From contig OZ004614.1 of the NCBI GenBank assembly GCA_963924565.1, positions 4,278,001 through 4,342,000 of the forward strand: 64,000 nucleotides of DNA, in the 5' to 3' direction. Under the pieces are notes generated by a model, which was not told the DNA's origin, did no database searches, and worked only from the letters and a program-made list of their open reading frames with translations. How positions within the stretch are numbered: the stretch's first letter is position 1; each line of letters starts with the position of its first letter. Source of the stretch: Ascidiella aspersa. Taxonomy: Eukaryota. Of the stretch, positions 554 to 10,200 are shown piece by piece. A program made the position numbers and the translations under genes.

Positions 554-1319
554 CTGTGAGTCGCATTTGGTGACCTCCTGCCTTCTCCTCGTTCCTGCGT
601 TTCTTCGCCTCCTTGCCTTCAGGACTCGCAAAGAGTTGGCGTTTCGAAACCGACCTCTGACCAGAAGCATCCTTTGCGGACGAGGACGATGACGTCACAC
701 TCGGTGACGTCACAGCAGGCGATGGCGAGGTGGTGACTTCACGGAGCGGTGACGTAACAGGGAGAGCGGCGCCGTCGAAGGTGGGGGCAGGGACGCGAAG
801 GGCGGTGACGAAACGAGCCAGTGACGTGTTAACGTTGCTGTGGGTGATTCTTGGAGGGCTGGCGAAGTTTAACCCTGTGCAAAGGGGGCGCGTGGGTTCG
901 ATGCGCTTGCCTGGGGCAGGGCTGGGGCTGGCGTTCTGGTCGCGGCAGGATAGGGGTAAGGGTGAAGGGCGGCTGGGGCGACGCGGCTTTTCAGAATGAT
1001 GCTTCCTGAAGGGTCGAGTGTAGAAGTGGGGAACCTTCTTACTGTCTTGGAGCTCCCATTCGTAGCGCTTGGCGGGGATCGGGGAAGCTGGGACGGTTTG
1101 GCGGGGATTCGAGCCTCGATTTTCGGCCGAAGTGAGTGATGACGGGTCGAAGTTCCAACCGTCGCGCAGACGCCGCGCTTCGCGGTCCATTGTTGCGTTG
1201 AGCATCTTTCTTGTTTCTGTCGGGTCGGACTTGCCGAAGAGCGACTTGCACGCCAAACGCGGTTTGCTGTTGTCCGACTGGCGCGAGAACACGGTCAAGC
1301 TGTTGCGGTCAATTGCCAT
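554..1319 (-). CDS. Cdkn1: Cip/Kip family cyclin-dependent kinase inhibitor (p21/p27/p57-like), main coding exon; paralog 1
   Basis: CDI-domain motifs in order: ACKSLFG (cyclin-binding), GWNFD (CDK-binding), RYEWELQDSKKVPHFY (cf. p27 KYEWQEVEKGSLPEFY). Also many S/T-P sites and a KKRR NLS. ATG at 1319. The ORF runs into a donor CAG|GTATTT (GT at 553-552) in phase 1 after QMRLT, so the ORF tail GIYLFFF is intronic. Acceptor ttttttctcgtAG| upstream (exon starts 1364). Confidence 0.92.
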
Positions 1320-1841
1320 TATGAAGTTGCAGATTCGATTTAAACTCTTACAACTGGAGAATTCCTACGAGAAAAAATAAGTCGGTTAACAACTTGCCTG
1401 TCCAGGCTTGCTCGGGCAAAACGCAAACATTTGATCAGGTTAACTCTACGCTGCCGAGTTCTTTCTAACAGCGCCGCGCACCACCGCCCGGTATTTCCAT
1501 GAATTGTGACGTCACATAACGTTTTGTGACGCACCGGTAGTTTTCTGTTTGAAGAATAACAACGGAAACTCATAGCGCGAAGGCTACCTCATATAGTAAA
1601 CAACAAGTAGCGGTTTTAATGCAGTAATGAATAATAACTTCACTAAATTAAAAGCTTAACATCCATGTTTATAATAATAACAAGCTATTCCTACTGTTTC
1701 CTAACTGTACATGGCAACTAAGTCGCCCTGTAGTAGCTGTACCTTTGGTAGTAGTAAAACGCTGCTATACCAACAACAGCCAACGGCCCAACTGGCAGCC
1801 TGGCACTTGTCCCGACGCGTTTACTACGCCGAGACTCGCAA

Positions 1842-1861
1842 ATACAAGCCCGGGCTTGCCT
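1842..1861. promoter_or_regulatory. Candidate p53-family response element
   Basis: ATACAAGCCC-GGGCTTGCCT matches RRRCWWGYYY x2 at 19/20 with no spacer, ~520 bp upstream of the Cdkn1 paralog 1 ATG. Confidence 0.6.
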
Positions 1862-1949
1862 GGCACCTTTCTTGCCGTTTTGAAGCTCAACCGTCTCAAC
1901 AGACCGTTGAAAACTCAATACTACGCTTCGCAAAGAAAGACTCGCTCTT

Positions 1950-2070
1950 TGTAAGGAGGCGCGCCGCCTTTTTCTCTCTACTCTTTTTTCTCTCTCTTTA
2001 AAAGTCGCGCGCTTTTGCCTTTTTCCTCCGCCGGCCCTCTCTGTCTCTCTCTCTCGAGAGAGAGCGCGAT
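1950..2070. promoter_or_regulatory. GC/CT-rich candidate core promoter of Cdkn1 paralog 1
   Basis: CT/GA tracts (ctctctctcgagagagag palindrome), GCGCGC boxes and a TTTTAAAG element on the minus strand in a CpG-rich segment. Confidence 0.35.
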
Positions 2071-3614
2071 AACATCTGTCGCCGCTCCCCAGAATAGAAA
2101 GGATTAAATCGATTCTGTACGCTCGGCTGGGCCAGAAGAAGCACAACACATGACAGGCATTATACGAGCGGCTGGCGTCGAACAACTGGGAAAACACATC
2201 GATTCCCGAGCTGACAGGTTGAACCTGCAAGAACTTGCGCCTTTTCCAGTTGCTTCTTAGGCTTTAAGTCGGATTTAAACGGATTTAGACAATGGCATTT
2301 ACATGGCTCAAACGCCATCTTGTTGCCCACTTTGTATAGTTCAAATCAAATCAATAACGTGTGATTTTTGTTTGAGGTTATTTGCCTTTATTAATTAACT
2401 AGTTTGATTGACACAGTATAAACTTCAGTCGAACTCTAACGCACTAATGTTATTTTCTAATTTGTACATTTTAAGTTTAAAACATTTGATGCAATGCATG
2501 ACCTCTTACAGGACTATGTCTGGTTATCTGTTTGAACAAATTTGCCCCAATATTAAATCCATAGACTCGAGTGGAAATTAGCTTAAGGCAAGACTTCTGG
2601 TACGCATTTTCTCGAGTTATTAAAACTTGGACAACATGAATAATACTCAGAAAATATTGTTTTTACTTAGTTTGTCTTAGTTAAGTGTATATCGCTCCAA
2701 CCAAACAGGGGTTTAGCAAAAAATCTTGAGCTTGGTGTTTGGTTATGTTTGGTTTACTATACATTGCAAGACCACTTGCATGTCATCGTAAATAAACAAC
2801 ACTCGGGTTTTATCGTCGTTGCTCGCTTTATGTTTGTTGTTCCAAGGCGTTTTAAACCGCGGGCAAATGCAAGACACGCAACGTTTTATCAACTGCTCGT
2901 AAATTGTTTGTAAACAATTTTAACTGGGTTGACTTTAGTTGAGGTAACACCAGGGGTAAGAGCAGAATAATTTTTTTTTTTTGAAAGCAGTGACACTTTT
3001 TCTTTTTGGAACGCATGAAAATGTTTAAAGATGTCGTCACAAAGTTACGTCATAACCGGATGTTTAAAAGAAGTATTTTTTCGGAAACCTAAGGTTACCT
3101 TTCGATGTAGTGCACAAATAAGCAACTGAAATCTTAGGTTAAATAAATTCAAGGAAATGGCAGAAAAGCCTGATTATAAACAAACTTGGCCCGGTAAAAA
3201 AATAACATTTTTTGGCCTATACGACGTACCTATAACTAATAATTTACCGAATAATAACACTGTGCACGCGGAACAATGTACCGCTAATTACGAATAAAAA
3301 GTAAATTAATAGAGTAAATTGACTCAAACTAAACAACTTCTTTCTTATTCCTACTACCTATACAGCTTATTACCTTAACGACAACACTTCGAGTGAAAGT
3401 CGAACAAGAATTGAATATGTACGTGAGTGGCTTGATCGTTTTAAACTTGCGATGTTTGCAGAAAAGCAAACTATTTTGTAAAAATATGTCGGTTATGGAA
3501 TTGACCTAATTTTCTTTGTCAATTGGGCCTGGAAGTTTGATATTATAACTTTTTGTTGCTGTTTTTCTTCGTCCTTGTTTTTGATTTTAACAAAACAAAT
3601 AGTAAACGAATTTT

Positions 3615-6600
3615 CGTTTATTTGTTATGTAAAGTAAATATGACTGACTGATTAATTGACCATTCGGATCGAAAACGTGTATCTCCAATTAAATCAATAG
3701 AATTAGATGGCAGTACAAGTTGTGTTAATCTACAAGGTATTAAATCCTACTTGAACACATTGCCCAACTAAACAACACAAGGCGCATTAATCTCGAAACA
3801 AAAGCACCGAGAAGTCGGTTTGTTCAACGTCACATTTTCCATTGTTCGCTCACAAAGCAAGGTCGGGCGATTAACAGAGCGACAGTTGTTCGTCAACAAT
3901 TCAACAACTGTCGACGCAATAACTTCCAGAAAACTGTCGCTTTTCAAGCAGCGCACGCAGCTCGCGTGTCGCCCATTGTTACGTCAGAGGTGCAGTGTGA
4001 CGTAACAAAGCGCCGTTCAATTTCAAAGCCTTCGACCAAAGGCGATAATTTGTATCTGGCCTCTCCAAGCCGCCCGATGTTCAACATATGGTCCAGGCCC
4101 GCCACCCCCACGAAACGCGCGCGCTCGTCGGCTGTTGCCGTGTGACGTCACAATGCGACAGATGGAAGAGTGAAAGTGCAACCGGGCGCGCGCGCTTTCC
4201 ATTGTTGGCTAATAAAGTGCGATTGTGCGTGGATGGAATGGGATAAGTTCAAGCAAAAACGTTTTAATGTGATTTTAGATTTAACAAATTGACGCAAATG
4301 CGGTTAAAGTTTCTCGTTTGAAGTTATAAAAGTAATTTTAACTCTTTTTTCACAGGTTATAAAACCATCTAGTACAAGTAATGGCCGACATATCGCCAGC
4401 TAAAATGCAAGCGCCCAAATGAAATAGAAAAAGTTAATTTGAAACATAGAACCAAATATTAAATGACAAATCGTTTTTTTGTATTTTTTTAGCCACAATT
4501 ACAAATTTAGCATCTTTGTCTAGCATTTCAAAAAAATATACATTAAACGACCTTTAAAGTTTACTTGCAAAGAGTTAAGTCGTTAGCTTGTTTAAAAACT
4601 GTAGCTCTGAAGATAGCGTTACATAAATTAACAAAAAGTTCAGATGTTGATTAGACAACCATCAGTCCGCAATATTCCGACTGCATTTTGCTCGAACTTG
4701 CCAAGTTAGTCGTGTTAACACTTATTCCTTTTTAAGGTGTAATGTTTTTGATTCCCCCCAAAAGGAAATGAGTCAGTTGGTATGACGTAACCAAAACCAG
4801 GGGTATTCCATAAACGACATTTAAGCCCCGGTTTGGCGTTTAAGCGAAGCAAAATGCAACGTAGCGTGTATCCTGTGTCATGCCGTTTTACAGCTTATAG
4901 AAATGGTTTATCTCACGAAGTTGCCTTACCACAAAAAACAAAAAAATACAGAAAAATAAAGTAACTTGTATTTGGAGCATAATAGGTTGGAGGTTGTAGT
5001 GTTGTATTAGACTAAGAATGAAACTAAATGCCCATACAGAAGTAGGGTACCATGTTGAAAGTGGATTACTATTTTGAGACACTTTTAGAATTGCTACCAT
5101 ACTTCTGGATGGGCTTTGGCATGCTTTCGTCGGATAAAATTGCATTAATTATTCATTACGAAATGTTTAAGATTTCCATATAAGCTTACATTTGCTTAAT
5201 ATCTAGGACTGACGAAATTTGTTTCACCTCAAATAAAATAAGTAAAAAACAAAACCCTTCATGCATGTTGTAAGTTCTAATGTCTTAGTTTTAAACAACT
5301 TCCTAATAGTTTTATAGTAGTCTTTGGTTTGGTTAACAGGATGCCTGACGTGATATTGTTATTATTTCATAAATAATCTGATTATTATTACGTCATACAA
5401 AACATTGCGTGATATCATGAGTTGTTCCCTTTTCATCAAAGTTATTTCCTTCGACTCCAAATCGACGTTTGTACTTCAGCTTAGCGCCGTCGTGACCATT
5501 GTTACATCATAGAGCGACTTCCCTCACCGACGCCTTTTGTGTTCAATGTGACGTCATAAATATGTGCTAAAACATACATTAGGACACAACAAATGAAGAA
5601 CACTGGTGGTTACACTATCGCAAGCTATGTTACAGCAGCATACCGAATTATGTTACAGCAGCATACCGAACAAACGAATATACATTTAAGTGTTTTCATT
5701 TTGCTGTCAATTTATATGGCCTTAATGGTGTATTACACTTGTCAATTTACTCCAATGTTAGGATCAAAATAACCAGAGTTAGGTTGTTCTTTGATACCCG
5801 GTGTACATATCTGTCATATTAACAGCACATATTCCCGGCAGAGTCGCACAATTTCCCTAAGGTCCACACAATTGACAATCAATCAATCAATCAACATTGG
5901 ACTAGTTCCTTTCACTGAGTCTCTAGGATTTGCAAAATGCGCTTCAACATGTAAGATTCACCAATCAGGTGCTTCATACAGGTCACGTGTCTACAAATAA
6001 TTCAGAATCCTTGTTTTCTCCAAACGTTTGGATAGTTGAACGCTAAATTATAGGGTCATAACTATTTATGGCTTGTGGCAACATGAAGAAAACATAAATA
6101 TATTGCGGCACCCCCACTAGAATTTTCGCGGAGTAACTCACTATAATATAATGTCAAGTGGTTTACTATAAATAAACGAAACTGGAACAAGACAATTAAA
6201 CTCAAAGCAAAGTAGAAGTTATATTTTGATCTATTTATATTCTATAATCATACATAAAGAGTAAAAGGCTTCGCAATAATAGCAAAAATAAATTTCTAAA
6301 GATTTTAAAATATCTCGCGGCACCCTTGAGCATTAGAAATAGCACCCAGTGTACCGCAGCAACGCGGTTAAGAACCACTGCGCTAAACCCATCAGAATCT
6401 TTAAATCTAAACCGAACGGTGCATCGTATGTAGCACATGCAGCTTTAACCACGTGGCACCGCGGAGCGATCTGATTGGCTGTTGGGTGCGCAGGTGTGTT
6501 CGACCAGCCCTCATCCTTTGGATGTATATTTTTACTAGGAACACGCCACCAAGAAACCGTATATAGGGCTGCGGCAGCCGAATATAGGCACGCCTATATT

Positions 6601-7267
6601 TAAATACCGTGTAGGCCTGCAGAACATGTCGAGCAAACACGGTGATTGTTTTTACAACAGGGAATTAAACCACGGGTTTTACTGAGGGCACGCAAAGCAT
6701 TTGTTCGCTTTGTAAATCCTTGCAATGTTTTTAACCAAGAACAATCGTCTATTTGACAGGAATTTATACCTCTTTGCCTCGTAATACTGTTAGCAAGTCT
6801 GTCCCTGGGTAAAATGATGTTCCGCTTCTATTTTGGTTAACTATAACAACAAGCATGTTCCGTATTACAACCGTTTGTATCTTGTATGTAAATGTCCACC
6901 GGCAAAGGATTCCTTAAATGTTGACATGATTGACAGCCTGTGTACATTTATAGCGCATAGACTTAAAACCAGTGCTGTATGGAATTACATCGGATTTTTA
7001 ACACAATCTAATGCATTGTTTTACATGCTCACTAAGCAAACAATGGAAACTGCGACGTTGAACAAACAGACTTCTCGATGCGTTTGTTTCGAGATTAATG
7101 CGCCTTGTGTTGTTCAGTTGGGCAATGTGTTCAAGTAGGATTAAATACCTTATAGCTAACACAACTTGTATTGCCATCTAATTCTATTAATTTAATGAAA
7201 GATACTTGTTGTCAACCTGCGTGGGTAATCAATCAGTCATTTTTATTTTGCATGTAAAATAAACAAA
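3615..7267. repeat. Dispersed inverted duplication, arms ~3615-3850 and ~7035-7267
   Basis: Arms are reverse-complementary with high identity (both ORF tracks translate ...TLNK.TSRC.CFEINAPCVV). Confidence 0.88.
5626..5670 (+). repeat. 22-bp tandem duplication
   Basis: tatgttacagcagcataccgaa x2 with a 1-nt spacer. Confidence 0.9.
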
Positions 7268-10200
7268 AGCGCAGTTAATGCTTCTTTTCAAAAACTTTTG
7301 CCAAAAAGTTAGCCTTTGACTAACATTTAAAGTTCTTGACGAAGTAGTTCGTCAAGGAAAAAAATACTGTTGTGTTTCAGCAATTAAAAACAACATAAAG
7401 TTGATGACGTCATCTAAATTAAAAATCGGAAAATTACTTTTTTTACGCTTCTTGTTACATTTTGGTAACTGGGGAAAACTATTTTGGCGGAATGATTTCC
7501 CTATGTTACTCTAAACAAGAACACCAATCGCACAACACAGGGGTTGCGTGGTTATTGGATTTGTTTTATCTCAACAGGTGGTAACTTACTAAATATTTTT
7601 TCTGTAAAATCAACATTAGCAAAACATATAAGCATATGATGAAAAAAACTATACTTCCTCCGTAAAAAAATTACAGCTATATCTTATCGAAACATTCTTT
7701 GTTAAAGCAAAGGCTAAGAGAGAAAAAACTTCCATAGGCGATACCAGAACAAATCACCAATTTAAGACGTTATTTAAAGCGGTGAAATCGTAAAACGAAG
7801 GTTCAGTGGGCCAGAGGGAAGTAATTTACCGAGTTTCTTGCGTCCTGGTTCAACTTAGATCGGGTCACACACAGTGGCGAAAGTGACCTAGTGCTAAGTA
7901 GGTGTCGCCTGGCACATTTACAACCTGGCACCAAACCTCAAACTGGGTTCTGTTGGTTCTGGCCGCTTGCTGCAGGAGACGGAGTGAACTCTGCGTTGTG
8001 AGACTAAAAAATAAAATCGTCGTACGTTCATTTATTATATGTGACCGATAATATTAGATCAGAGCCGATACGCGATATCAAGTGGAAGTTGTACGATACT
8101 AGGTATCGGTTCCGATCGGATAACGTAATTATAGAAATACATTGCAGCGCTTTTGCCTTTTGATTTTTTTTAAATAAGAAGTAATCGATAAAGATAACTA
8201 AGCTTTCTTAACTCTAAGACTCAACCACAAAACACAACCAAATTCTAAATCAGTGTTTATTTTACATTTTTATCTCCGAGAAACCACTTTTAATTTTTAT
8301 GGCTTTTTGGAACTGCGACTCAACAAGTTTTTTTGTTTTTGTGACACTTTTAGGGACACTATACGCTGCGCTCTATGAGAACCGGAAGCAATCTTGATCA
8401 AATCGAAATTTAATCTATTTAGTATTAGGAGTAATTATTTATACTTTTCGGAAGCGGCTAGATATCATAAAAAATTGAAATCTACTATTTTTTGGCATAG
8501 AATCATCACTTGGTATCGACGTTAAACAGATACTTTCCCAAATAGAATGCAACATATGCTTACGATTACACGACAACATTTATTTATTGCTACCGTAGCT
8601 GCCAAGACAATCCATCACCGTATATCTAGAGAGTCATAGTGTTTAAAATACAATATTTCATATTTGAATCTTTTGTAATCTATCAGAAATCCAGAGATAC
8701 ATAAGGAAGCTAGGACAATCAATCACCGTACAAGTACATACATATAGAATTCGTATATTGACAGACGGCCTCAACGGTTTGCGACAATTCCGCGTCGTTG
8801 AAATGACCGCCGATAAAGCGGGACCACAAACAAACCAAGGCAGAAGTGCCTACACTTGAGTGCTGGTTGTCTGTGACATAAACAACACAACGGAACATCT
8901 CCAGCCTTCAACCAGTCAAGTTAACAGTGGCTTGACGCCCCCTCAGCACAAGTATGCTTTCAGACCCTTGTCGCCGACAAACTGACAGTATTTGAGTGCT
9001 CTTGTGAGTTGCGTGAGTGACAGATGGCTGAAGAGGAATAAAGTTCATTGTTGATAAATGATTTGAATTGGTTCTTCTGTTTCGATTAGTGATTAATAGC
9101 GACATCGATTTCTAAGGGTTGGAAAAAAGTCACGTTCCGCTTTTGCTGTAATCTTCCACGAGAGGCTATTTTAAAGCAAAGGACAAGCACCAACAAGTTT
9201 TATCATGCCATTTTTAAGTAATTAGTGAAGTCCTGCTTGGTTGTTATTCGAGTTTTAATGAAAATGTACAGATTATAGCTGTTTGTGTTTGTATTAGGCC
9301 ATCAAATGAATACTTGCATCACAAGCAAACCAAAAATATTTTTAACCGAATCCAGAAAATTTCTGTGATGGTTCACTCTAAGTGTGGCGACTTCCATATT
9401 CATACAGCACCTATTCAGGGGTTAAACTTGCTGTGGTTATTAAGGGTAAAAAATGTTACACCTAAATAGGCTTTTAAATTCGAATTGTGGCCACCTCCAT
9501 GTTTATTCCACACAAAGAGAGATCGCTTCCCTGGGTACAGGCACACCTGTTACCGTTTCACACCAGCACTTATCTTACTCAAATACGGCGTACAAGCGGC
9601 CGCACAGCACAGCACGCAACGTTTACCACATTAGGCCTGTTTACCACCTCAAATATCAACCTTTTGACCCTTGGTTAAGCTAGGGGGGCACTTGTGTACC
9701 CACAAAAGAGTTAGTTAAATATCAACTTTTAAATTGTGATTGGTTCTCTTTACACCGTAGTGTGGACTTTGCGGTTAATTTTTCCTCAATTTGTTGTTAC
9801 AAATCGGTTTTTAAACTTTAAATCCTGTCCAATGTTCAATTGCGACGATCACAGGACATATACGCCTCCGGGATGGTTAAACATAAACTTTCCGCTTACA
9901 TAACCGTTGGTGAATTATTGTTTTGTAATGTTTCCAGTTGTTTGTAAAAGCCTATGGTAACATATTATTGCAGCCGGGGTTTGAAGTACAAAATCCAAAC
10001 AAATAAATAACTAAGCGACTTTGTTCAAGTAGCTTCGGAACCTTTAACTATATTTACTAAATCACTGCATATGTTTTAAACAAGAATCTGGTTCGTGTTG
10101 TATATCTTAGAAAATATGTTTATATTTTACTTATAAGAGTAAGAAAATTACTTTCTTTGGTGAATAGTGCGTAATAAAACCGACCCTCGCGCGTTTTAAT

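What the first reader, a model, noticed from the sequence alone, without database searches (positions are those of the whole stretch)
1390..1861. Near-perfect p53 response element upstream of an invertebrate p21-like gene
Seen: 19/20 zero-spacer site at 1842-1861, plus half-sites at 1803-1812, 1390-1399 and 1404-1413 (AGGCTTGCTC, perfect). Established: p53 induces CDKN1A in vertebrates, whereas fly and worm p53 homologs are not regarded as acting through their Cip/Kip genes. Inference: the p53-CKI arrest circuit may predate vertebrates.
Basis: partly seen in the sequence, partly recalled or inferred. Interest (0 to 1): 0.75.

Follow-up and report, generated by a model that had tools for sequence, protein, structure and literature searches.

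The report
Likely p53 site at ascidian CKI
A near-perfect p53-type binding motif sits about 500 bases upstream of a sea-squirt cell-cycle inhibitor gene, and the only other copy of its core in that genome sits upstream of Mdm2, so p53-driven arrest through such an inhibitor may be older than vertebrates, though nothing has been shown at the bench.

Summary
Window 1842-1861 reads ATACAAGCCCGGGCTTGCCT, 19 of 20 to two RRRCWWGYYY decamers with no spacer. It lies 523 bases upstream of the ATG (1319, minus strand) of a Cip/Kip CDK-inhibitor gene (Pfam CDI). The nearest homologues are ascidian.

It is the only such site in 64 kb (0.10 expected) and one of 624 in the 308.6-Mb genome. The chance of one in the 600 bases upstream is about 0.001-0.003. 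The genome encodes two p53/p73 homologues with most DNA-contact residues kept and a tetramerisation domain.

New here:
- The Mdm2 orthologue carries a perfect 20/20 zero-spacer site 496 bases upstream of its inferred ATG.
- The 14-base core CWWGCCCGGGCWWG occurs only twice in the genome, at Mdm2 and at this gene.

Against:
- There are no binding or induction data, and the transcription start is unknown.
- The site is absent from the orthologous locus of one distant ascidian.
- The sestrin, EI24 and p53-family loci have none.
- The gene is generic Cip/Kip, not specifically p21-like.

Verdict: probably (about 0.55) a working p53-family element. An ancestral circuit remains unproven (about 0.25).

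The parts
1842..1861 (.). Candidate p53-family response element: two decamers, 19/20 to the consensus, zero spacer, 523 bases upstream of the CKI ATG
   Evidence: Single-copy context.
1845..1858 (.). Perfect 14-base palindrome CAAGCCCGGGCTTG, the core of the element. The class CWWGCCCGGGCWWG occurs only twice in the 308.6-Mb genome.
1803..1812 (.). Extra half-site, 9/10, 30 bases from the full site
   Evidence: read directly
1390..1413 (.). Second full site, 19/20, with a 4-base spacer (9/10 plus 10/10 half-sites), 71-94 bases upstream of the ATG
1668..1673 (-). TATAAA on the gene's strand, 169 bases gene-ward of the element. A possible core promoter (inferred only).
1507..1514 (.). Palindromic CRE-type octamer TGACGTCA between the element and the ATG
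1365..1380 (-). Pyrimidine tract plus AG on the gene's strand. A possible cis- or trans-splice acceptor in the leader (inferred, no read support).
   Evidence: read directly. One search gives no reads here.
554..1319 (-). Coding exon 1 of the Cip/Kip gene (ATG at 1319-1317, GT donor at 553-552). The CDI domain is residues 26-61. Exon 2 lies outside the window at L005:8972-9084, minus strand.
   Evidence: A few RNA reads lie over 751-1200, with the first mate on the + strand.

Best explanation
The 20-mer at 1842-1861 is a working promoter-proximal response element for the ascidian p53/p73 homologues. It is probably helped by the 4-base-spacer site at 1390-1413.

Proposed mechanism: a p53/p73 tetramer binds the site, one dimer per decamer, with no spacer between them. 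It activates transcription of the Cip/Kip inhibitor gene, whose ATG lies 523 bases away. The inhibitor then blocks cyclin-CDK and stops the cell cycle. The same factor would act in parallel on the Mdm2 orthologue, which has a perfect site of the same type, so this genome would hold the two-gene core p53 -> Mdm2 and p53 -> CKI.

Shown: the motifs, how rare they are, where they lie, and the presence and conserved residues of the factors.

Inferred: binding, activation, the trigger (genotoxic stress is my first choice, developmental cell-cycle exit the second), and the arrest itself.
For: 1. Motif quality. The site is 19/20 with zero spacer and both CWWG cores intact.

2. Rarity. There are 624 sites with at most 1 mismatch in 308.6 Mb, which is 2.0e-6 per base. 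That gives 0.001-0.003 for the 600 bases upstream of one ATG. The stretch is not part of a repeat.

3. Clustering. The only two sites in the 64-kb window with at most 1 mismatch and spacer 0-13 both lie within 550 bases upstream of this ATG.

4. Cognate factors.
- There is an intronless p53/p73 gene with Pfam P53 (E 2e-50), P53_tetramer (E 2e-15) and a weak TAD match.
- In the alignment to human p53, C176, H179, C238, S241, C242, R248, R273, C277 and R280 are kept. A276T and R283S are changed, and the K120 lysine is offset by one position.
- A second, multi-exon gene keeps R248, R273, C275, C277 and R280 and has an oligomerisation exon.

5. A control chosen in advance.
- I asked whether Mdm2 has a site.
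- The SWIB-domain hit at C3:27037369 belongs to an Mdm2 orthologue. It has a SWIB exon and a RanBP2-finger plus RING exon, and its best solved relative is human MDM2 297-489 at E 1e-20.
- One of only 25 perfect 20/20 sites in the genome lies 496 bases upstream of its inferred ATG. An 18/20 site lies 115 bases further upstream.
- The chance of a perfect site within 4 kb of one gene is about 3e-4.

6. Shared core. CWWGCCCGGGCWWG occurs exactly twice in the genome, at Mdm2 and here, against 1 for the reversed control. Of the 10 sites with the looser core CWWGYCCGGRCWWG, the other 8 have 2-4 mismatches in the 20-mer.

7. Same layout at both genes. The order is a GC-rich island (GC 0.50-0.57), the element, TATAAA 80 or 169 bases gene-ward, then the ATG about 500 bases from the element.

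8. Precedent. Candidate p53 sites 320-540 bases upstream of the Trichoplax Mdm2 coding region bind its p53 in vitro (PMC5039725, passages).
Against: - This is a motif-only inference. A review passage I read says that under 8% of in-silico canonical sites recruit p53 in mammals (PMC7498329).
- The cores are CAAG/CTTG, not the CATG that I recall as the strongest.
- There is no transcription start. The RNA run gave only a few reads over 751-1200 and none from 1201 to 3000, with about 6% of the run read.
- The orthologous locus of one other ascidian (metagenome contigs, 43% identity over the best segment, and matching only this paralogue) has no site with at most 1 mismatch at spacer 0-13. It also has no site with both cores intact and at most 3 mismatches at spacer 0-2, in 20.7 kb.
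- Other candidate targets have none: sestrin (20 kb), EI24 (10 kb), the p53 retrogene upstream region (10 kb) and the p53/p73 multi-exon locus (20 kb). That is 0 sites with at most 1 mismatch and zero spacer in 60 kb.
- The two other CDI paralogues have none with zero spacer.
- I wrote the 14-mer pattern after seeing both sites, so its count of two is not an independent test.
- Perfect sites genome-wide (25) are close to the count of about 14 expected from base composition, so most such sites are chance.
- In Ciona, the published regulators of Cdkn1.b are Brachyury and Zic factors. That preprint does not mention p53.
Confidence: 0.55

Rival explanations
1. Chance motif. The 20-mer is one of the roughly 600 consensus-like sites that an AT-rich 308-Mb genome holds anyway. 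It happens to lie near a gene that makes a reader think of p53, and it does nothing.
For: - There are 624 sites genome-wide against 426 for the reversed control, so most are background.
- 9 of 100 shuffles of the window give at least one site.
- Half-sites are at chance level.
- The scan reads many windows, so a 0.1-0.3% event near some CKI gene is expected now and then.
- The site is absent at the orthologue of another ascidian.
- Under 8% of in-silico sites are bound in mammals (PMC7498329 passage).
Against: - The position-specific probability is 0.001-0.003.
- There is a second 19/20 site 430 bases away, and there are no others in 64 kb.
- The only other genomic copy of the 14-base core is at Mdm2, the one gene where a p53 site is most expected. 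A single random second copy would fall within 1 kb of that ATG with probability about 3e-6.
Confidence: 0.3
2. Developmental use. This is a variant of the best explanation, and its probability is part of the 0.55. The element is bound by maternal or zygotic p53/p73 as part of programmed cell-cycle exit, for example in notochord or muscle. It is not a DNA-damage arrest switch.
For: - In Ciona, Cdkn1.b stops division in notochord, muscle and epidermis, and depends on Brachyury and Zic-r.b (bioRxiv 10.1101/2022.05.16.492211, sections 7 and 8 read).
- A paper whose title I saw only in reference lists (Noda 2011, Dev Biol) reports that maternal Ci-p53/p73-a and -b regulate ZicL and notochord differentiation. 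A direct p53/p73 -> CKI link would close a feed-forward loop.
Against: - I did not test whether this gene is orthologous to Ciona Cdkn1.b.
- The preprint does not mention p53.
- The twin site at Mdm2 points to the classical stress module instead.
- I could not read the Noda paper.
Confidence: 0.15
3. Another factor's site. The 14-base palindrome is bound by a different dimeric factor that recognises a GC-rich palindrome, and its resemblance to a p53 site is incidental.
For: The element is a perfect palindrome over 14 bases with a CCCGGG centre, and many dimeric factors bind palindromes.
Against: - The AP-2, EBF/COE and LSF/CP2 consensus sequences, as I recall them, do not fit the spacing. This was not tested with a motif library.
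- The flanks fit RRR/YYY at 5 of 6 positions.
- The twin at Mdm2 fits all 20 positions.
Confidence: 0.05

Closest known systems
p53 response elements of vertebrate CDKN1A (p21)
   Same: A canonical two-decamer site upstream of a Cip/Kip inhibitor gene, with a second site nearby. The expected output is CDK inhibition and arrest.
   Different: - It is promoter-proximal, about 0.5 kb from the ATG. I recall the human sites as lying 1.4 and 2.3 kb upstream.
- The cores are CAAG/CTTG.
- The gene is a generic ascidian Cip/Kip without an aromatic PIP box.
- No functional data exist.
p53 sites of the MDM2 promoter, and the candidate sites upstream of Trichoplax Mdm2 (PMC5039725, passages read)
   Same: The ascidian Mdm2 orthologue has a 20/20 site plus an 18/20 site about 500-630 bases upstream of its ATG. 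The Trichoplax sites lie 320-540 bases upstream and bind Tap53 in vitro. The CKI site shares its 14-base core class with the ascidian Mdm2 site.
   Different: The target here is a CKI, not Mdm2. For the CKI I found no invertebrate precedent in my searches.
Drosophila p53 and dacapo
   Same: An invertebrate p53 homologue together with a single Cip/Kip-type inhibitor.
   Different: In flies dacapo is not radiation-responsive, and the p53 response was long held to be apoptosis only (PMC2828916, passages read). Here a strong site lies at the CKI promoter.
Ciona p53/p73-a and -b acting on ZicL (Noda 2011, Dev Biol; title seen in reference lists only)
   Same: Ascidian p53/p73 paralogues, one multi-exon and one intronless as in this genome, used as transcriptional regulators.
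   Different: The target and the setting differ (embryonic fate). I did not read the paper, so what it says about binding sites is recall only.

Membership tests
canonical p53 response element | Two decamers RRRCWWGYYY with few mismatches | tested here: met
   19/20; the one mismatch is at an outer purine position
canonical p53 response element | Spacer of 0-13 bases between the decamers (0 in strong sites) | tested here: met
   Spacer 0 at 1842-1861 and spacer 4 at 1390-1413
canonical p53 response element | Both CWWG cores intact | tested here: met
   CAAG and CTTG; also passes the core filter
canonical p53 response element | A cognate p53-family factor in the same genome, with DNA-contact residues and an oligomerisation domain | tested here: met
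   Two genes. Pfam P53, P53_tetramer and a weak TAD match. S241, R248, R273, C277 and R280 are kept, A276T and R283S are changed, and the K120 lysine is offset by one. The second gene keeps R248, R273, C277 and R280.
canonical p53 response element | Bound by the factor | not testable with these tools
   Needs EMSA, DAP-seq or ChIP
canonical p53 response element | Confers p53-dependent transcription on the neighbouring gene | not testable with these tools
   Needs a reporter and an induction assay. The RNA run gave only a few exon reads.
canonical p53 response element | Kept at orthologous loci (supporting, not defining) | tested here: inconclusive
   Absent in the one distant ascidian reachable.
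Cip/Kip CDK inhibitors (Pfam CDI) | CDI domain over the curated cut-off | tested here: met
   27.1 bits against a cut-off of 25, E 4.4e-6, residues 26-61. The genome search gave 25.2 bits.
Cip/Kip CDK inhibitors (Pfam CDI) | Homologues named as such | tested here: met
   Phallusia mammillata 'Cyclin-dependent kinase inhibitor 1B', 48% identity, E 2e-50
p21/CDKN1A type specifically | C-terminal PIP box Q-x-x-[LIM]-x-x-[FY]-[FY] (consensus recalled) | tested here: not met
   The position reads Q-M-R-L-T (end of exon 1) then E-M-L (start of exon 2), with no aromatic pair. The two ascidian homologues have the same pattern.
p21/CDKN1A type specifically | One-to-one orthology with vertebrate CDKN1A | not tested
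   No tree was built. The genome has at least three CDI genes plus a divergent one in the window.
Mdm2 (the control locus) | SWIB/p53-binding domain, RanBP2-type zinc finger and C-terminal RING in one gene | tested here: met
   SWIB E 4e-8, RING E 5e-11 and RanBP finger E 4e-4. Human MDM2 297-489 at E 1e-20. Exons were searched apart.

The most novel reading that the evidence does not exclude
A two-gene p53 core network, p53/p73 -> Mdm2 (feedback) and p53/p73 -> Cip/Kip (arrest), was already in place in the common ancestor of tunicates and vertebrates. That would be before p53, p63 and p73 separated and before p21, p27 and p57 separated. The arrest arm of p53 would then be ancestral to chordates' crown group Olfactores rather than a vertebrate invention, and the ascidian sites would be its surviving trace.
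Probability: 0.25. Interest if true: 0.7.

Novelty: new member of a known kind. Interest (0 to 1): 0.5.

Why it matters
The textbook view is that invertebrate p53 homologues guard the germ line through apoptosis, and that arrest through a CDK inhibitor came with vertebrate p53 and p21. The review passage and the fly passages both reflect this view.

A working p53/p73 site at a Cip/Kip promoter in an ascidian, the sister group of vertebrates, would move the arrest arm back at least to the tunicate-vertebrate ancestor. Failing that, it would show the link can arise more than once.

The finding also gives a concrete and cheap experiment. There are two 20-mers, one at Mdm2 and one at the CKI, in an animal group where reporter electroporation and morpholino or CRISPR knock-down are routine. 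The Mdm2 site is a built-in positive control.

Tried and rejected
- **Transcription start and splice pattern from RNA reads.** The single read-laying run read about 6% of the RNA run. It gave depth 3.55, 1.45 and 0.23 over 751-1200 and nothing from 1201 to 3000. It listed no start, no joint and no spliced-leader end, so the TATA, the acceptor and the start site stay inferences.
- **Variation between individuals.**
  - Contigs of runs X1 and X2 span the site, and no difference is listed between 1787 and 1928.
  - The table is cut: 26 of 35 differences are listed for the X1 contig and 18 of 26 for the X2 contig. I therefore draw nothing from it.
  - A low-depth X4 contig stops fitting at 1836 with 29 letters unplaced. 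This is unexplained.
  - X4 ('organism B') shares many variants with X2, so it gives no cross-species test.
- **Paralogues.** Two other CDI genes (10 kb each) have no zero-spacer site with at most 2 mismatches. One has a 19/20 site with an 8-base spacer about 800 bases upstream, which is within chance.
- **Other candidate targets.** Sestrin, EI24 and both p53-family loci have no strong site. The Pfam families BTG and DOR were not found in the genome, and those answers warn that absence is not shown.
- **Repeat origin.** Rejected for the CKI site. It is true for five other perfect sites.
- **Other palindrome-binding factors (AP-2, EBF/COE, LSF).** Set aside on recalled consensus spacing only.
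- **Literature.**
  - Ten searches found no paper linking p53 to a Cip/Kip gene in a tunicate, amphioxus or other invertebrate.
  - The library lacks most subscription journals. PMC2890203 and PMC2869528 were not held, and I could not read Noda 2011.
  - I did not ask for supplements. Table S5 of PMC11555623 (list of invertebrate Cdkn1 genes) may bear on how this gene should be named.
- **Not run.** I did not run the large protein search, structure prediction or Rfam, because the protein family was not in doubt.

Full report
**The observation.** In one search the window reads ATACAAGCCCGGGCTTGCCT at 1842-1861. Against two RRRCWWGYYY decamers this is 9/10 plus 10/10 with no spacer, and one search finds it as the only match with at most one mismatch in the 64-kb window. 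My own scan shows that the last two form a second 19/20 full site with a 4-base spacer.

**The gene and the organism.**
- On the minus strand an open frame runs from the ATG at 1319 to a GT donor at 553-552. It carries a Pfam CDI domain (27.1 bits, cut-off 25).
- The word search returned 2 proteins among 1,869 candidates. These are a Phallusia mammillata protein named CDKN1B by UniRef (48% identity, E 2e-50) and an uncharacterised Clavelina lepadiformis protein. The window therefore comes from an ascidian.
- The homologues run on past the end of exon 1. A tblastn against the 10 kb before the window places a short second coding exon at L005:8972-9084, minus strand.
- I searched only exon 1 and left the joined model out.
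- At the position where p21 has its PIP box, the end of exon 1 and the start of exon 2 give Q-x-x-L-x-x-M-L, with no aromatic pair. All three ascidian proteins share this pattern. The gene is a Cip/Kip inhibitor, but 'p21-like' is not supported.
- The genome has at least two more CDI genes. I saw a 263-residue frame there but did not study it.

**How rare the site is.**
- Shuffles of the window expect 0.10 such sites, and 9 of 100 shuffles have one. Perfect half-sites are at chance level: 19 seen against 18.2 expected.
- Genome-wide there are 624 sites with at most one mismatch in 308.6 Mb, against 426 for the pattern read backwards. 25 of the 624 are perfect.
- That is 2.0e-6 per base, or about 0.001 for the 600 bases upstream of one start codon. 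A Markov model of the local sequence gives 0.0026, and 0.0022 for two or more sites at any spacer from 0 to 13.
- In the whole window, the only two sites with at most one mismatch and spacer 0-13 are the two upstream of this gene.
- The 221 bases around the site are single-copy in the genome.

**The factor.**
- Pfam P53 finds two loci in the genome. One is an intronless frame of 385 residues. It has the DNA-binding domain (E 2e-50), the tetramerisation motif (E 2e-15) and a weak transactivation motif.
- Aligned to full-length human p53, this frame keeps the zinc ligands, S241, R248, R273, C277 and R280. It has A276T and R283S, and the lysine of loop L1 is offset by one position (residue roles are from recall).
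- The second, multi-exon gene keeps R248, R273, C275, C277 and R280 and has an oligomerisation exon.
- One multi-exon gene plus one retrogene is the pattern described for Ciona p53/p73-a and -b (PMC9091270, passages).

**A control chosen before looking.**
- If canonical sites are in use in this animal, Mdm2 should have one. A search with the SWIB/MDM2 family gave a hit at C3:27037369.
- The locus has a SWIB exon and a last exon with a RanBP2-type finger and a RING. The best solved relative of that last exon is human MDM2 297-489 (E 1e-20).
- One of the 25 perfect sites listed, AGACTTGCCCGGGCTTGTCC at C3:27035946-27035965, lies 496 bases upstream of an ATG followed at once by a GT donor. I take this ATG for the start codon, which is an inference. 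An 18/20 site lies 115 bases further upstream.
- A perfect site within 4 kb of a given gene has a chance of about 3e-4.
- The two sites share the centre GCCCGGGCTTG. The class CWWGCCCGGGCWWG occurs exactly twice in the genome, at Mdm2 and at this CKI, against 1 for the reversed control.
- The looser class CWWGYCCGGRCWWG has 10 sites (control 20). The other eight have 2-4 mismatches over the 20 positions.
- I wrote these two patterns after seeing both sites, so the count of two is descriptive. Still, a single random second copy would fall next to Mdm2 only with a probability of a few in a million.

**Layout.** Both elements sit in a GC-rich island (GC 0.50-0.57) flanked by AT-rich DNA. A TATAAA follows on the gene's strand, 80 bases on at Mdm2 and 169 bases on at the CKI. 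The ATG follows about 500 bases from the element. At the CKI, a palindromic CRE-type octamer (1507-1514) and a possible splice acceptor (1365-1380) lie in between. The start sites are inferred, not seen.

**Results against.**
- Sestrin (two identical tandem copies, 20 kb), EI24 (10 kb upstream), the p53 retrogene (10 kb upstream) and the multi-exon p53/p73 locus (20 kb) have no zero-spacer site with at most one mismatch. Neither do the two other CDI genes.
- The RNA run gave a few reads over 751-1200, with the first mate on the + strand. That fits a minus-strand transcript in the usual stranded library. It gave none upstream.
- The only other species I could reach was an unnamed ascidian in JGI metagenome contigs. 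There are four loci from one species, and its protein matches only this paralogue in my window and paralogue loci (43% identity, E 2e-31).
- Its 20.7-kb locus has no site with at most one mismatch at any spacer 0-13. It also has no site with both cores intact and at most three mismatches at spacer 0-2. Its best site is 18/20 with a broken core, 4.5 kb upstream.
- Ascidian non-coding DNA turns over fast (recall), so this argues against deep conservation without excluding function in this lineage.

**Literature.**
- Fly dacapo is not radiation-responsive, and the fly p53 response was long held to be apoptotic only (PMC2828916, passages).
- Ciona Cdkn1.b stops divisions in notochord, muscle and epidermis under Brachyury and Zic factors. 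p53 is not mentioned in that preprint (sections 7 and 8 and a term search).
- Candidate p53 sites 320-540 bases upstream of Trichoplax Mdm2 bind its p53 in vitro (PMC5039725, passages).
- Under 8% of in-silico canonical sites recruit p53 in mammals (PMC7498329, passage).
- Ten searches found no report of a p53 to Cip/Kip link in a tunicate or other invertebrate. The library lacks most subscription journals, so this is not proof that nothing is in print.

**Reading.**
- A motif alone would be weak evidence. Four things raise it: its position-specific rarity, a second site beside it, conserved factors, and above all a twin at the one gene where a p53 site is most expected.
- I put a working p53/p73 element at 0.55, a chance motif at 0.30 and another factor's site at 0.05, leaving the rest open.
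- Within the 0.55, a stress-induced switch seems more likely than purely developmental use (0.15), because of the Mdm2 twin.
- The wider claim, that the arrest circuit predates vertebrates, needs the site in more than one tunicate lineage. With one negative species I put it at about 0.25.

**Limits.** There are no close-relative genomes, no start site, no binding or induction data, one RNA run read at 6%, and no motif library for rival factors.

Noticed in passing
G000:C3:27035946-27035965 (L018:7947-7966); Mdm2 exons up to C3:27040992: The ascidian Mdm2 orthologue has a perfect 20/20 zero-spacer p53-type site 496 bases upstream of its inferred ATG, an 18/20 site 115 bases further upstream, and a TATAAA 80 bases gene-ward. 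This is a candidate p53-Mdm2 feedback element in a tunicate.
   Followed up: yes
G000 C1:10647662, C3:7466451, C4:25770983, C9:7679796, C9:7688532 (L034-L038): Five of the 25 perfect p53-type sites are the same 20-mer inside a dispersed repeat that aligns over about 450 bases or more. A degenerate second copy of the motif lies about 200 bases on. So a repeat family carries a perfect p53-type site.
   Followed up: partly
G000:C3:7925977-7960028: Three identical perfect p53-type 20-mers lie within 34 kb, probably a local tandem duplication.
   Followed up: no
window 3001-3150: A short stretch with very high contig depth (about 5,000-9,500 against about 60-120 around it) and many loose ends in all runs, RNA included. 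It is a high-copy repeat.
   Followed up: no
window 680-840 (inside CKI coding exon 1): A run of TGACGT-type, CRE-like motifs (gtgacgtcac and variants) lies inside the coding sequence, where the protein has V-T-S-P-type repeats. Similar CRE-plus-ccattgtt groups stand at about 3960-4160 and 5500-5560.
   Followed up: no
It ends in Q-R-K-I-T-G, like the exon 1 end of the gene studied here. No p53-type site lies near it.
   Followed up: partly
G000:C7:19634376-19638098 and 19642194-19645916: The sestrin gene appears twice with identical scores, 7,818 bases apart. This is a tandem duplication or an assembly duplication.
   Followed up: no
window 1836-1865 in run X4: A low-depth contig of 'organism B' fits up to 1836 and then has 29 letters that do not fit, just before the element. 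X4 otherwise shares many variants with run X2 of organism A.
   Followed up: no
G000:C7:6289954-6289973 (L031:4992-5011): GGCCATGTCCGGACATGTCA, an 18/20 site with the ideal CATG cores, lies inside a 175-residue open frame of unknown identity.
   Followed up: no
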